Below, in pieces: positions 42,258-56,683 of a DNA stretch of 64,000 bases. The stretch covers positions 1,674,001 to 1,738,000 of the forward strand of contig CP075496.1 in the NCBI GenBank assembly GCA_021613535.1. Reading direction: 5' to 3'. Both the position numbers and the translations under genes were made by a program. Numbering within the stretch: the stretch's first letter is position 1; every line of letters starts with the position of its first letter. The notes below the pieces were generated by a model. That model saw only the letters and a list, made by a program, of their open reading frames with translations. It made no database searches and was not told the origin of the DNA. Origin of the DNA: Adineta vaga. Its lineage: Eukaryota; Animalia; Rotifera.

Positions 42258-42915
42258 TTAAACTTGATTTTTTAATAAATCACCAAATTTTGTCATAAAT
42301 TTATCGACTTTACTTTTAACAACTGTCGAACAATAACCTTGACTTGGATTTCGACTGAAATAATCTTGATGATATTCTTCAGCTGAATAGAATGGATTAC
42401 TTTCAATTGGCAAAATTTCCGTAATAATTGGTTCTTTATGAACATGTTCATCAGTCAAATGTGCTTTGAACATTTCAGCTTCTTTCTGTTGAACAGGATC
42501 GTGATAAAAAATCACAGAACGATATTGTGTACCTATATCACTACCTTGTCTAAATAGAAACATTAGATTTGATTTTAAATTTCAGAATTAACGAACTGAT
42601 CTTTTGTTGTTGGATCATGAATATTGAAAAAAACATTTAATAATTGTTTGTAAGCAATTGTTTGAGGATCAAATGTTATTTGAATAACTTCAGCATGATT
42701 TGTATTTCCTGTGCACACTTCTTCATACGATGGATTTTCTTTATGACCACCCGCATAACCCGAAACAACTTTTTCGACACCTATTGAAAAAATCTTATTC
42801 ACAATCCAATTCCTATTCAAAATAGTTCTTTACCTTTCAAACGTTGAAAAACAGCTTCAAGACACCAAAAACATCCTCCACCTAATGTTGCTAAACTTTT
42901 CGAATTTGACATCAT
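42258..42915 (-). CDS. msrA: Peptide methionine sulfoxide reductase A, bacterial-type
   Basis: [46 protein letters not shown] and [15 protein letters not shown]. Two short introns. Confidence 0.93.
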
Positions 42916-42986
42916 CTAAAAATCAATCATATATACATTCATATTTCTTCGAATATTCAATCGAAAATAGGATAACAAAATTTTAT

Positions 42987-45086
42987 TCACAAAAACATTG
43001 ATAACGAAGGATCTTTTGAAATCCATCCAGTTGCATAATAAAGTTCAAATCCACGAAACATTTGATATTTACATTGTTGATAGATAAGTGACGTTTGTTT
43101 CATTTGATAATAATTCTTCTGATCAGTCGATTGAATCATTTTATATAATTGAAACAGTTCCTTTTTACATAGACGAGAAACTTCGTTATTGGGTCTAATG
43201 AAGAGAAGAAAAAAACACACGCATAAGAAAGTTTCTTCGAAGAGAACAAATATTTCCTACATACTTCCGTCTTCCCGTTGATGGTTCAATTAATTCAATC
43301 GTTCGATCACGAAGATTCCAATTAAGACTATTGTAAGAATTATTATTTCGATTGATTTCTTCTTTCCATTTCAATCTTGTATGTCCTATACGAGGATGAT
43401 TTAAACGATAAGATTCGGGTAACATATTTGAATGAAAATAATCTTGTAATCGACAACATAAGGCACGACATATATGACCATAATGAAATGGAAAACCTAT
43501 TGAAAAATAATAAATATTATTATTAAAGAAACTTATCAAACGATTATCTACCGATTGTTATCGAATATAAATAAATCGGTTGAATTAGATGTGAAAGGAG
43601 TGCACCTTGAATTCCAAGTACATTCCAACGAAAGATTTTATCAGAACATGACATATGTCTTACATGTTTACCATTAGCTATGGCATCGAGAGAAAGAATA
43701 CTACTTTTCGGATCCGTAGGAATTGTTCCTTCACCTAAAGAAATCATTTGACTATTAAGAAGGAATGAAGATTGATTTAACAAACCATTTTCAATTTTTG
43801 ATCGAAGTTGACCTTGAGTACGTGCGGTACGATAACATTCATGTTCATCTTTAATTGATGCTTCAATAATTTTATCTCTTGGAGAGAATAATGCAGAATC
43901 TCCACATGGAGCAAATGATGTATAAAAATGAATACGAATTGTTGATTTTAATATTAATTTATCCTCATGACTTTTTTCAAATATTGATTCTTGATTTTGA
44001 TTAAAACAATCAATTTGTTCGTATATAAATCTATACAACAACAAATAATAATTGACATCAATTATTTTGTAACAAACCTGAGAAATCCTCGACGTGCTAA
44101 TTGTTCAGCATGACTATCATGAACAACTAATCCTTGTGAAGATAATACTGAACCACCAACACATTTATTACCTACATAATCGTATATGAAATTGTTATAA
44201 TTAACATCGAATTGCAACACTGAGATATATTCGAAGAGTAATGAAAATAGGAGAAAAGAGAAAATAGAATTTTTTTTCTCTCAAATAATCTATTATCTCG
44301 ATTTAGAATAGAATAATGAAACTGACATTTGCTTTTGGGTAGAATTTTCAGCCTCACCGCCTCACTAGAAATGATTACATGGTCTCATTCTTCTATTTAT
44401 AATGACAAAAGTGTGACATATTTGTTCTCTTTCGTTCTCCGGAAACGGAACTGCATCTTCTAGTTATATACTTCTTTTCATACCTGTTGCTAAACTAATA
44501 ACACTAAACGTTTGTTCATTACATTGTTCTAGAACAAAACCAGCAAGAACTTTACAACCAATCAATTCTAATTGCACACTAACACATAGATCACGATATT
44601 TTGATAAAATTTCCGATGCAATTCGATCAAATAATGTACAATCTTTATCTAAATTGAATCTCTACAATACAAAGAAAACATTCATTTTCTTTTGTTGATC
44701 ATCGAATATTTGTTTTTACTTGATTTTGTCTTGCATCTAAACTTAATTGATAGAGAACTTTATATGCAGCTTGTATTGATGCTTCACGTTTTGTCGAGGC
44801 GAATTCTGCTGGAAATTGTCGATCATTCAAAAGTACTGCTATAGCAAAACTAGAATTGATTTACAGTATATTCAAAAAGAAAATGTTCATTACTCACTTA
44901 CTTTGGTTGATGACTTTGTCCTGATTGACTAATCATTTGAAATAGTAAATTTTGTCCATTTAATTGTGCATATTCATTTAATAATGAAAGACAATTCTTG
45001 GAAAGAAGTGTCAATGATGGATCTAATTTGAATTCTTCTATAAAATCATCATAGGATTGTTCAATTGTCTGAAGATTGCCTGACAT
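42987..45086 (-). CDS. ADAR/ADAD-family adenosine deaminase with one dsRNA-binding motif
   Basis: dsRBM ([12 protein letters not shown]...GQSHQPKF...[15 protein letters not shown]) and deaminase motifs [25 protein letters not shown] and [21 protein letters not shown]. Confidence 0.88.
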
Positions 45087-52514: not shown

Positions 52515-55500
52515 ATGAATTCCTATTCATCATCATCTTCTTCGGAAGTCTTATTCAAACGATTTCGTCTTTGGAAACGACAATATCTTCATGTTGTGAT
52601 CTATACATCTTTATTTTGGATCTTTCTTGATGTATTTTTTATTATGCTATTTTCTGATTGTACGAAAGAAGTACTTCTTCCATGTCCATCAGCTTCTTCA
52701 AATGAAAATGTCGATGTAATTAAATCTGCTGAAGACATTCGTATTCGACATCCGAAATTTCAAAATAATGGAATCTATCAACGAAATCAAACGATATCAG
52801 AACGAAGTAATCTAATAAATAAAAAGAAAATCAAACAAATGAAAGATTCCGGAGGAGGTTTTATAAAAAAATGGTTTGGATCAGGTTTGAAATGAACTTT
52901 TAAAAATAAAAGACAGACATTTTCTTCGTTATTTACAGATGGAAATCCATCGCATTGGCCAGGCGAAGGCGGTCGTGCTGTTGTTATACCGGAAAACTTA
53001 AAACAAGACGCAAAAAATCGTTTTAAAGAAAATCAATTCAATATTGTTGCATCTGATCTAATGGCTTTGAATCGATCAATCAATGATCAAAGATCATCAA
53101 AGTAAATTGTTATTTTTCTTGTAATGAAATATTCTTCAATCGTTTCTTTCGTTTTCAGATGTCGATCTCATGTATTTCCACCAGATTTACCAACAACATC
53201 GATTATAATTGTTTTTCATAATGAAGGAAATTCGACATTATTACGAACATTAACAAGTATTGTTGGTAAAAGTCCAATTGAATATATTCATGAGATTATT
53301 ATGGTCGATGATGCAAGTGTTGATCGAGGTAGAATTGAAAAATATTTTCGTTATTTTTTTATGTAATTTTCTTTTCATGCTATAGAATATCTCAAAGATA
53401 CATTGGAAACGTTTGTTAAAGAATTACCAGTTCGTGTTCAAATTCTACGAAATACTCAACGATTAGGTTTAATGAAATCTCGTTTGAAAGGTAAAGGAAA
53501 AAAGAATGCAAACGAATGATTGATTAGTTTGATTTTATATTCAGGTGCGGAAATAGCAACGGGTGACACTTTAACATTTCTTGATGCACATATTGAATGT
53601 TCACCGGGATGGTTGGAATATTTGTTATATGAAGTGAAAAAGGACAGGTTAGAGAGATTATCTATTATAAAGATTGAAATGAATTTCTTGTTTTAGAACC
53701 GCTGTTGTATGTCCGATTATTGATGTGATTAATGATGATGATTTTGCTTATCTAACTGGTAGTGATATGACTTGGGTAGGATTTTGTATTTTTAAGATAA
53801 AATAATTGTGATAAGTTTGAAAATTAATAGGGTGGATTTAATTGGCGATTGAATTTTCGATGGTATCCAGTACCAAATCGAGAAGAAGTTCGTCGAAATT
53901 ATGATCATTCCTTACCACTTTTGTAAGATTCAATTTGTTTTCTTATATTTAATTTATAATGTTTGTTAATAAAACTAGATCTCCAACAATGGCGGGCGGT
54001 TTATTTACAATCAATCGTGAATATTTCTATGAAATTGGTTCATACGATCCTGGAATGGAAGTATGGGGTGGAGAAAATTTAGAAATGTCATTTCGTGTTT
54101 GGCAATGTGGAGGCAAAGTTCTTATTCATCCATGTACGATAATTTAATCTTTATATTTGAAAATCGAAATCGAAATCGAAATTGATGATTTTAGGTAGTC
54201 ATGTTGGTCATGTTTTTCGTAAACAAACTCCATATACGTTTCCAGGTGGTACTGGCAAAGTTATCTTTCATAATAACAAACGTCTTGTTGAAGTATGGTT
54301 AGATAAATATAAAGATTTCGTTTATTCCATTATGCCTGGTTTGAATTTGATTATGAAATGAATGAATGAATTAATTGATTGATTGGTTGATTTTCTTTTC
54401 TATTAGAATTGAAAAATGTTGATGCAGGTGATGTATCCGAACGTCTTGCACTTCGTGAACGTCTTAAATGTAATGATTTTCGTTGGTATTTAAAAAATAT
54501 TTATCCTGAAAGTTCAATGCCGGTGGATTTTCATCATGTTGGAGCTGTAAGTTTGACTTAGACTTGAAAGTATTTGAGAGGTGTTTCCTTTTTTCTTCTT
54601 CTTTAAATTCAAATGCATTTCTTCTATCTCATACGAATAGCTGAAAAACGAAGCTCATGGTTGTGCCGATTCACTCGGTTATGACAGTGAGAATGGAGTC
54701 AATCAAAATGCCGGCATTTTTCCTTGTCATAATCAAGGCGGCAATCAGGTGTGTATACTAATATGTTTCTTTTAACTTATTTCAGATACGGAGTGGATCA
54801 AATTCTTGTCTATCATTTCGTTATGTTTACGGAAGTTCGAGAGCGAATCGAACGACTAGATTATATACAAAGACTTGTATTAATCGAAGTCATTCATCTA
54901 AGACAGCTGCTAATCAGGTCGGAAATATATGAGAATCATGTATGCTTGAATAATAGAATCTATTTATCTATCAATCATTGCATGAGAATCGATTTTTCAA
55001 GTTGATGTGAGAAAATATTTTATTTATGAATTAGACGCATGGATTACAATTGCACAAGATTGTGATTATATAGAATTAGAACAGTTATATGTATGAGAAA
55101 GACAATTTCCGAATGTTTTGTTTTTCGAATCAGTTGAAAATGAATTCTTTTATGCAAAGATTGATATATGATGGATGAATTACTAGCGAGTGAACCTATA
55201 TCTTATTCATTTATGCTACTTATCTGCCTTCCTAACTAGCTTCTCATATTTTACATAAGCTATATAACTAGAATTGAGTAGTCATTTTTATTATCGTTAC
55301 TATGATAGTACATCGAAGAATGATAATTTTCAAAGAAAGTATTTGAAGCTAAAAAGTATATTCAGATTCACAAATCGATATATCGACTAAAATTCCTTAT
55401 AGAAACATAGATTACAATCAGTAATTGTGTCGATGTTTATCTTTTTCTACAACTAATCATTATTCAATACATTTATTCTATAAGATTCATATGTAAAATA

Positions 55501-55900
55501 CATAATTTTGTGTAGATTGTGGTTTATTCAAAAAATGGTGAATTACGTTTTGATGATTTGTGTATGGAGAGTAGCAAAAATAGTGTTGTTAAATTACAAA
55601 AATGTATTGAAGGCAATCAAAAACAAGTTTGGAATTACAATAAAGAAGTAAATGAATCATTTCTTTTCTTTCTCATCCTTATAATTAATCAACAATCTTT
55701 CATTTAGTCAAAAGAAATGAAACATACATATTCCGATCAATGTCTTACTGTAGATTCAAGCAAAGACGATGGTAAACTACATCTTAGTAAGTGAATTTTT
55801 CAAAGTTTTTAAAGAAAATACAATGGAAATTATTTTAGTGCCATGTAAAGAAGGAGAAACGAATCAAAAATGGCATTTGGAGCAATCTATGTTAACTTAG
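52515..55900 (+). CDS. Polypeptide N-acetylgalactosaminyltransferase (GALNT1/13, pgant5-like)
   Basis: Type [26 protein letters not shown] (DxH), [44 protein letters not shown], and a C-terminal ricin-B lectin domain. Stop TAG at 55898-55900. Confidence 0.93.
54786..54917 (+). other. Predicted alternative (mutually exclusive) exon for the GalNAc-T lectin alpha subdomain
   Basis: TTTCAG|132 nt open in phase 0|GT, encoding [44 protein letters not shown]. It parallels exon 54641-54748 (two Cys, terminal NQ). Confidence 0.7.
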
Positions 55901-56683
55901 TTCACCTTTTCTCTTTCGTTTTTTTCTTCTTTTTGTTGAGAATGATACTCAAATTTTTTTTTTCATTGTTTCTATTTTTATTCATTTATTCTTGATGAAG
56001 AAAAGTTTTAACATTCCAAATTTTTGTCGAGAATTTCATCGAAGGAAAGTTTATGCCATCAACGATATTGTCAACGCGAGTTATCAAATTATTTTTCGCG
56101 AATTTCTTTTACCCTGTGTGGCAATAAATATTTATGAAACGAAGAAAAATATTATATCGAATCGATTTCTTTAATGTAATTACTAAAATTTGTTATTGCT
56201 TTCTTTCGTTCTTTTGTTATCTACTGTCTTTTACTCATTCATACCAATCCTTTACTTTCTATGGTCGTATTTTCTTGTGTTCATTTTTCTCCTCTTTTTT
56301 TCTGTTAAATCTTTCGAAAATATATATAGAGATATTTATTGCAAAGTCCTCTTCAAGATATTTTATGAATCATAATGACGATGTATAGTGTCATCTGTTG
56401 ACGGGTGGTTTTCATTGTAGTACAAATGATAGCCACATGGTTATTTCTTTTCGCTTCGTCTGAAATTTAAAATAGTCATACTTATGAAGGAATTCTAATG
56501 AAGATTTATTTGCTCTTTAATACGGCTTTCATAAGAACATAGCGATATGGTATATGATCATGAATTGTTTTACGTTTTCAGCTCATTTCCTAGGGACTTT
56601 TTCGTTAAATATACTCGATGAACTTTATTACACATTCACGATGTGACTTTCCTTTATTTTCTATTTTCTAGATTTGAAACATA

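What the first reader, a model, noticed from the sequence alone, without database searches (positions are those of the whole stretch)
54641..54917. Hidden mutually exclusive exon pair: an acidic/basic switch in the GalNAc-transferase lectin domain
Seen: the only long intron of this gene hides a second phase 0-0 exon. Exon A (54641-54748) encodes [36 protein letters not shown], with 4 acidic residues and 1 Lys. It keeps the C-x-D and CH..GGNQ sugar-binding pattern. Exon B (54786-54917) encodes [44 protein letters not shown], with 8 Arg/Lys and no acidic residue. It keeps both Cys and the terminal NQ but replaces the binding Asp with Ser. The spacer between them is only 37 nt (54749-54785), shorter than the usual 50-60 nt introns here, which could sterically prevent A-B joining. 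Established: Drosophila PGANT9 uses alternative lectin alpha-subdomain exons of opposite charge to change substrate preference, and C. elegans gly-5 has lectin-domain splice variants. Inference: this lineage has an equivalent splice-controlled O-glycosylation switch that ORF-based annotation would miss.
Basis: partly seen in the sequence, partly recalled or inferred. Interest (0 to 1): 0.8.

Follow-up and report, generated by a model that had tools for sequence, protein, structure and literature searches.

The report
Conserved alternate lectin exon, unseen in RNA
A sugar-adding enzyme gene of a bdelloid rotifer has a second, hidden version of one exon; selection has kept it as coding sequence in many related rotifers, so it is probably an either/or splice choice, but no transcript using it turned up in the four RNA data sets examined.

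Summary

**What is there.** Exon A (54641-54748), the 37-nt GT..AG spacer and exon B (54786-54917) are exactly as described. They lie in a GalNAc-T1/T13-like polypeptide GalNAc-transferase gene.

**Evidence that exon B is real coding sequence:**
- It is present in the ohnolog on contig 1 and in 15 metagenomic bdelloid-like loci.
- It is 132 nt wherever its full length is on the contig (16 loci), and only the predicted frame is open in all 16.
- Omega is 0.34. Omega = 1 is rejected (p about 1e-6) on the seven loci found without using exon B.

**Evidence for either/or splicing.** The A-B spacer is 27-44 nt everywhere, shorter than every RNA-supported intron of this gene (49 nt or more). A branch-point-like motif sits about 10 nt after A's donor. 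This fits steric mutual exclusion.

**Evidence against current use.**
- Assembled RNA contigs from four runs (four studies) show only 54546^54641 and 54748^55516.
- No B junction was seen, and B's first 36 nt have no coverage.
- The window's B is the fastest-evolving copy, and one close lineage has deleted B.

**Best reading.** B is a conserved alternative alpha-subdomain exon that is rare or conditional here. It resembles PGANT9 exons 8A/8B but is not orthologous to them. The GALNT13/Pgant5/gly-5 family is already known for such exon pairs. This scan also noted the same kind of pair elsewhere in this genome (s1-498898).

The parts
52936..55900 (+). Part of a polypeptide GalNAc-transferase gene (GT27, GalNAc-T1/T13-like) laid with RNA contigs; the stop codon is at 55898-55900
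   Evidence: Spliced contigs with GT..AG joints in 4 runs. Pfam hits exon by exon: Glycos_transf_2, Glyco_transf_7C, Ricin_B_lectin. Best PDB relatives are 1xhb and 8v9q, both GalNAc-T1.
54407..54546 (+). Constitutive exon just upstream; it ends in phase 0 with ..HHVGA, at the start of the lectin domain
   Evidence: Joints 54337^54406 and 54546^54641; translation; omega 0.03 across relatives.
54641..54748 (+). Exon A: the default lectin alpha-subdomain exon, 36 codons, acidic, with the C-x-D, His and GGNQ sugar-site pattern
   Evidence: Joined to both neighbours in the RNA contigs. Omega 0.17. Net charge -3.
54749..54785 (+). 37-nt spacer. It carries A's donor (GTGTGTA), a branch-point-like CTAAT at 54758-54762 (a second, TTAAC, at 54772-54776) and B's acceptor (TTTCAG)
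   Evidence: 78% identical and gap-free against the ohnolog, where other introns are 36-59% with gaps. Length is 27-44 nt in all 16 relatives that hold both exons, and the motif lies 10-14 nt after the donor in 12 of 16.
54786..54917 (+). Exon B: alternative alpha-subdomain exon, 44 codons. It keeps both Cys and a conserved N-R-T sequon, has none of the sugar-ligand residues, and is followed by the donor GTCGGA
   Evidence: No RNA junction, and no coverage of 54789-54821.
54918..55515 (+). Rest of the long intron, 598 nt after exon B; not conserved
   Evidence: 53% identity with 212 gap columns against the ohnolog. Length is 150-516 nt in relatives. Only low-depth unspliced contigs lie on it. 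No Rfam match.
55516..55647 (+). Next constitutive exon, encoding the lectin beta repeat
   Evidence: Joint 54748^55516 in all 4 runs. Matches Ricin_B_lectin profile positions 41-86 of 126.

Best explanation
Exon B is an old, protein-coding, alternative version of the exon that encodes the alpha subdomain of the ricin-type lectin domain of a GalNAc-T1/T13-like polypeptide GalNAc-transferase. It lies 27-44 nt behind exon A in every lineage that has it. That gap is shorter than any confirmed intron of the gene. B's likely branch point sits only about 10 nt from A's donor, so A cannot be spliced to B. The pre-mRNA therefore takes either A or B between the same two flanking exons. A is the default and is all that the RNA shows in this animal. 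Use of B is inferred to be rare, tissue-specific or condition-specific. The A form has an acidic alpha subdomain with the canonical GalNAc-binding residues (Asp of C-x-D, His, Asn of GGNQ). The B form has a neutral-to-basic subdomain that lacks all three and carries a conserved N-glycosylation sequon. It would change or abolish lectin-guided substrate choice. What is shown: the anatomy, coding constraint on B, a short spacer in every locus, and A-only transcripts in four runs. What is inferred: that B is spliced in at all in this copy, that the choice is exclusive, and the biochemical consequence.
For: Both exons, the 37-nt spacer and their splice sites are kept in the ohnolog on contig 1. Five of the nine informative loci found through the upstream exon alone carry A, a short spacer and a 132-nt B. 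Ten further loci came from ORF hits to a B profile. Frame +0 is open in 16 of 16 copies, while the other frames have 19-64 stops; pairwise divergence by codon position is 0.28/0.24/0.46. Omega is 0.34 with 2dlnL 73.7 against omega = 1 (17 sequences). On the unbiased 7-sequence subset omega is 0.38, 2dlnL 23.3, p 1.4e-6. GC content of B is 0.36-0.39, like exons, against 0.16-0.30 in introns. Both Cys are invariant and the N-R-T sequon is present in 13 of 17 copies. Spacers are 27-44 nt against introns of 49 nt or more, and a YTRAY motif lies 10-14 nt after A's donor. B occupies the slot between the same flanks as the PGANT9 variable region (PMC6115407). Distant branch points near the 5' splice site enforce exclusive splicing in OGDH (PMC7969005 abstract). 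A donor-to-branch-point distance under 50 bp is an accepted steric criterion (PMC5740500).
Against: No contig in four RNA-like runs joins B to anything. Positions 54789-54821 are uncovered in all four runs, although intronic contigs at about 5% of exon depth were assembled nearby, and one of them reads straight through B's donor. The window's B is 66-68% identical to the B of its closest relatives, whose flanking exons are 83-94% identical. One close lineage (L006, L008, L009, L010) has removed B cleanly and kept a 51-nt intron. B's donor is non-consensus (GTCGGA). No detectable A-B homology, no PDB match for B and no Pfam match for B. Contigs drop rare variants, so absence is weak evidence, but nothing positive exists.
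Confidence: 0.55

Rival explanations
1. Relic exon in this copy. B was a working alternative exon in the bdelloid ancestor and still is in some lineages or in the other ohnolog. In this contig-4 copy it is no longer spliced in and is drifting towards loss.
For: Only A-form transcripts in four runs. The window's B has by far the longest branch: 1.0-1.2 against 0.13-0.15 for L007 and L012, whereas the window's branch in the exon-A tree is only 0.16. It departs from the consensus at several otherwise conserved positions. A close lineage has deleted B altogether.
Against: The frame is still open with no indel. Differences from an ancestor proxy fall 15/7/20 by codon position, with omega about 0.2. 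GC content is still exon-like. Acceptor, donor and spacer are intact and conserved.
Confidence: 0.3
2. B is a cassette exon included together with A, through removal of the 37-nt spacer or some other pattern. That would add an extra partial repeat rather than replace A.
For: Both exons are phase 0-0, so A plus B stays in frame. The minimum spliceable intron length in this animal was not measured.
Against: No 54748^54786 joint. Spacer lengths of 27-44 nt are below every confirmed intron here. A fourth repeat would not fit a three-lobed beta-trefoil (established knowledge of the fold). Both A and B start with the [LI]-[KR] and end with the Q that the flanking exons expect.
Confidence: 0.07
3. 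B is not coding. It is a conserved intronic regulatory element, an antisense feature or a chance ORF.
For: No transcript evidence for inclusion. The test on the two ohnologs alone was not significant.
Against: Omega is significantly below 1. Only frame +0 is open in 16 of 16 copies. Third codon positions are the most variable. Length is fixed while the flanking non-coding parts vary. No Rfam match.
Confidence: 0.03

Closest known systems
Drosophila pgant9 exons 8A/8B (PGANT9A/B; PDB 6E4Q, 6E4R)
   Same: Two alternative exons encode the alpha subdomain of the lectin domain, with opposite net charge. One form is confined to a single tissue and the other is the general form (PMC6115407). The variable stretch lies between the same conserved flanks as here.
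   Different: The gene is not orthologous: all three exons tested are closest to GalNAc-T1. Here one form also loses every canonical sugar-binding residue and gains an N-glycosylation sequon. Use of B and its effect on substrates are unproven.
Tandem duplicated exon substitution events annotated in GALNT13 / Pgant5 / gly-5
   Same: This is the GalNAc-T1/T13-type subfamily, listed as having such exon pairs in vertebrates, arthropods and nematodes and judged convergent (PMC9741552).
   Different: The human and fly events are in different regions of the protein (supplement). I could not check which region is involved in gly-5. A rotifer case was not mentioned in what I read.
Steric mutual exclusion by a short inter-exon intron or a branch point close to the upstream donor (alpha-tropomyosin exons 2/3, from my own knowledge; OGDH exons 4a/4b, PMC7969005)
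   Same: The intervening intron is too short, and the branch-point-like motif lies next to the upstream 5' splice site. The criterion of less than 50 bp is used in PMC5740500.
   Different: The branch point is not mapped here, and the minimum spliceable distance in bdelloids is not known.

Membership tests
Polypeptide GalNAc-transferase (GT27) | GT-A catalytic domain with a D-x-H motif plus the Gal/GalNAc-T motif region | tested here: met
   Pfam Glycos_transf_2 (E 4e-7) and Glyco_transf_7C (E 5e-8) on single exons. D-A-H is in the exon 53545-53647 translation. PDB GalNAc-T1 at E 2e-15.
Polypeptide GalNAc-transferase (GT27) | C-terminal ricin-type beta-trefoil lectin domain | tested here: met
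   The next exon matches Ricin_B_lectin positions 41-86 at the gathering score. Exon A aligns weakly (E about 0.5) to the GalNAc-T2 alpha repeat.
Mutually exclusive (tandem duplicated) exon pair | Adjacent exons, same phase, encoding the same structural segment | tested here: met
   Both are phase 0-0, 36 and 44 codons, between the same flanks. Both begin [LI]-[KR], hold a Cys pair and end in Q.
Mutually exclusive (tandem duplicated) exon pair | Detectable sequence homology between the two exons | tested here: not met
   hhalign of 15 A exons against 16 B exons gives probability 4.8%; the alignment is in register but not significant.
Mutually exclusive (tandem duplicated) exon pair | Both exons kept under purifying selection | tested here: met
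   Omega is 0.17 for A and 0.34 for B. Omega = 1 is rejected for B.
Mutually exclusive (tandem duplicated) exon pair | Transcripts contain one or the other, never both or neither | tested here: inconclusive
   Only A-containing contigs in 4 runs; no B, no A+B and no skipping of both. These are contigs, not raw reads, from whole animals.
Mutually exclusive (tandem duplicated) exon pair | A mechanism that forbids joining the two | tested here: met
   The spacer is 27-44 nt in 16 loci against confirmed introns of 49 nt or more, and a YTRAY motif lies 10-14 nt from the donor. The functional consequence is inferred.
PGANT9-type charge switch | Orthology to pgant9 | tested here: not met
   GalNAc-T1 chains outrank PGANT9 for all three exons tested.
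PGANT9-type charge switch | Opposite net charge of the two alpha-subdomain versions | tested here: met
   A is -1 to -4 in 17 loci. B is +2 to +8 in 15 of 17 loci, and 0 and -1 in the other two.
PGANT9-type charge switch | Isoform-specific substrate preference and tissue-specific use | not testable with these tools
   Needs enzyme assays and tissue-resolved RNA.

The most novel reading that the evidence does not exclude
After the bdelloid genome doubling, both ohnologs kept the A/B exon pair but are dividing the work. The contig-4 copy keeps a sugar-binding A (C-H-N-Q-G-G-N-Q) and lets B run fast. The contig-1-type copies (ohnolog, L030, L032) have lost the His and Gly-Gly of A, and two of the three keep a near-consensus B. 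This would be isoform subfunctionalisation caught in progress. B would encode a lectin-dead, N-glycosylated alpha subdomain that turns a glycopeptide-guided enzyme into a differently targeted one.
Probability: 0.2. Interest if true: 0.65.

Novelty: new member of a known kind. Interest (0 to 1): 0.45.

Why it matters
If B is used, bdelloid rotifers would be a further animal group that independently evolved splice-controlled swapping of the lectin alpha subdomain in a mucin-type O-glycosylation enzyme. That would strengthen the idea that this subdomain is a preferred tuning knob for substrate choice. The locus is also a clean natural test bed for steric mutual exclusion: the spacer is 27-44 nt across many lineages, and one lineage has a precise deletion of B. 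It could also show the fate of alternative exons after whole-genome duplication in an asexual animal. For annotation, it shows that a conserved coding exon can be invisible to standard RNA-seq assemblies.

Tried and rejected
- **Two-sequence tests, window against ohnolog.** Differences by codon position were 14/14/20 (not significant), and a permutation test on amino-acid identity gave P = 0.39. This was underpowered and was replaced by the 7- and 17-sequence tests.
- **Search for spliced B-containing proteins.** The 1.84-billion representative library gave only unspliced genomic ORFs that read through the spacer and the donor. The word search with P0003 residues 29-72 gave 2 candidates, both unspliced. 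Isoforms would in any case be hidden inside identity clusters.
- **Database matches for B.** The PDB profile search found nothing credible. Pfam found nothing for A or B alone.
- **A-B homology.** The A against B profile comparison was not significant.
- **Other copies in this genome.** Only the contig-1 ohnolog was found.
- **Non-coding RNA.** Rfam found nothing on 54400-55700.

Full report
**Setting.** The window is G000 contig 4, 1674001-1738000, in a genome of 100.8 Mb in six contigs. It is about 30% G+C and has introns of about 50-60 nt. Six scaffolds, and a paralogue of this gene on contig 1, fit the published Adineta vaga AV20 assembly. In that assembly chromosomes 1-3 are homoeologous to chromosomes 4-6 (PMC8494291). 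The species name is my inference; the tools name nothing.

**The observation.**
- The spacer 54749-54785 is 37 nt, GT..AG.
- Taken exon by exon, the gene has Glycos_transf_2, Glyco_transf_7C and Ricin_B_lectin.
- Its best solved relatives are GalNAc-T1 (1xhb, 8v9q) for three separate exons, ahead of PGANT9.
- The exon after the long intron matches Ricin_B_lectin profile positions 41-86, so the A/B slot is the alpha repeat.
- Exon A aligns to the alpha repeat of GalNAc-T2, matching its C-L-D and its C-H-N-A-G-G-N-Q.

**RNA evidence.** I laid Logan contigs of four runs from four studies (X1, X18, X19, X5) on 52800-56300.
- All four runs are spliced at GT..AG joints, so they behave as RNA.
- The joint 54748^55516 is in all four runs, and 54546^54641 is in three.
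- No joint touches 54786 or 54917, and there is no 54748^54786.
- Exon depth in X1 is about 72. Its only material on B is one unspliced contig, 54822-55088, at depth about 5, which runs through B's donor.
- The other three runs have nothing on B, although X19 and X18 hold low-depth contigs further into the intron.
- B is therefore not a major form, and in X1 probably below about 5%. Contigs drop rare variants, so this shows no presence rather than absence.
- The confirmed introns are 49-68 nt, one of 94 nt and the one of 767 nt.

**The ohnolog.** A paralogue on contig 1 (L002) matches through exon A, the spacer and exon B.

| Segment, window against ohnolog | Identity | Gaps |
|---|---|---|
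| Exons | 64-91% | none inside the 12 internal exons |
| Ordinary introns | 36-59% | present in most |
| A-B spacer | 78% | none |
| Exon B | 63.6% | none |

- B's G+C is exon-like at 0.36 and 0.39, against 0.16-0.30 for introns.
- With two sequences only, codon-level tests were not decisive.

**More relatives.**
- A metagenome scan with the upstream exon, chosen to be independent of B, gave 23 loci.
- Nine of the close loci reach far enough downstream to be informative.
  - Five (L007, L012, L014, L015, L017) have A, a spacer of 34-43 nt, a 132-nt B (cut short by the contig end in L014), and then a longer intron.
  - Four near-identical loci (L006, L008, L009, L010) have A followed by a plain 51-nt intron and no B.
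- A profile of B against 1.84 billion representative proteins found eleven more ORFs.
  - All of them are unspliced genomic reading frames that run through the acceptor and the donor, so they are DNA evidence, not transcripts.
  - Their contigs (L029-L039) show the same anatomy, with spacers of 27-44 nt.

**Is exon B coding?**
- In 16 complete copies, frame +0 has no stop. The other five frames have 19-64 stops.
- Length is always 132 nt, while the spacer varies between 27 and 44 nt and the downstream intron between 150 and 598 nt.
- Mean pairwise divergence by codon position is 0.28, 0.24 and 0.46.

| Data set (codon model) | Omega | 2dlnL against omega = 1 | p |
|---|---|---|---|
| Exon B, 17 sequences | 0.34 | 73.7 | about 1e-17 (my chi-square estimate, not computed in a call) |
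| Exon B, 7 loci found without reference to B | 0.38 | 23.3 | 1.4e-6 |
| Exon A | 0.17 | not tested | - |
| Upstream exon | 0.03 | not tested | - |

- Both cysteines are invariant. An N-R-T glycosylation sequon is present in 13 of 17 copies.
- B never has the Asp, His or Asn that make the sugar site in A.
- B is therefore a real coding exon kept by selection since before the two ohnologs split.

**Exclusivity.**
- In every locus the spacer is shorter than any confirmed intron of the gene.
- It always starts GTGTGTA.
- In 12 of 16 loci it carries a YTRAY motif 10-14 nt after A's donor and 19-30 nt before B's acceptor.
- If that motif is B's branch point, A's donor cannot use it. This is the recognised steric mechanism (PMC5740500; PMC7969005 abstract).
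- The branch point itself is inferred, not shown.

**Cautions for this copy.**
- The window's B is only 66-68% identical to the B of L007, L012 and L039. Their flanking exons are 83-94% identical to the window's.
- It has the longest branch in the B tree.
- Its changes are still codon-structured: 15/7/20 by codon position, with omega about 0.2 against an ancestor proxy.
- Its +8 charge is an outlier. B is mostly +2 to +4 elsewhere, and A is -1 to -4.
- Together with the deletion of B in the L006 lineage, this leaves a real chance that B is falling out of use here.

**Comparison with known cases.**
- PGANT9 exons 8A and 8B swap the alpha subdomain and its charge. The 9B form is confined largely to the salivary gland (PMC6115407). 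A form like that would be easy to miss in whole-animal contigs.
- The GALNT13/Pgant5/gly-5 family, to which this gene is closest, is listed as having tandem duplicated exon substitutions in three phyla, judged convergent (PMC9741552).
- This locus is therefore a new member of a known kind.
- A and B show no significant profile similarity, so their origin by duplication is only presumed.

I searched the gene model exon by exon, by reference.

Another first-reader note in this genome (s1-498898, 277 letters) describes the same kind of pair. It is probably the contig-1 ohnolog that I examined myself.

Noticed in passing
window 53979-54102: A second set of contigs, 90-95% identical to the window, overlies the most conserved catalytic exon at equal or higher depth (for example 84.7 against 70.4 in X1). 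It differs mostly at third codon positions. This is most likely the contig-1 ohnolog's mRNA, so both copies are expressed. It also explains the odd TT..AG joint 53783^53979.
   Followed up: partly
L002:1677-1784 (minus strand), L030:1273-1380, L032:2977-3084: In the ohnolog, L030 and L032, exon A has lost the His and Gly-Gly of the C-H-x-x-G-G-N-Q sugar-site motif. The replacements are C-Q-H-D-S-T-N-Q in the ohnolog, C-Q-R-D-S-A-N-Q in L030 and C-Y-S-E-N-Q-N-Q in L032. Exon B in the ohnolog and L032 stays near the consensus. This could be complementary specialisation of the two ohnologs.
   Followed up: partly
window 54792-54806 and L029:420-434: The window's B and the B of L029 share the motif S-G-S-N-S where all other copies have x-E-x-x-S. 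L029 is not a close relative by its flanking exons, and the first Ser uses codons from different families (AGT against TCG). This points to parallel change, or to a chimeric low-coverage contig.
   Followed up: no
L006:3303-3353 (also L008, L009, L010): This lineage has exon A followed by a 51-nt intron that begins with the same GTGTGTAT and then the next exon. Exon B and the long intron have been removed cleanly.
   Followed up: partly
L035:2166-4147: In one activated-sludge metagenome relative, the gene downstream of the GalNAc-transferase encodes RdRP-domain proteins (PF05183). I did not compare this with the window's neighbours.
   Followed up: no
window 42258-42990: Another first-reader note on this window (s1-484932) concerns a foreign-looking msrA behind an ADAR-like gene. 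I did not examine it.
   Followed up: no
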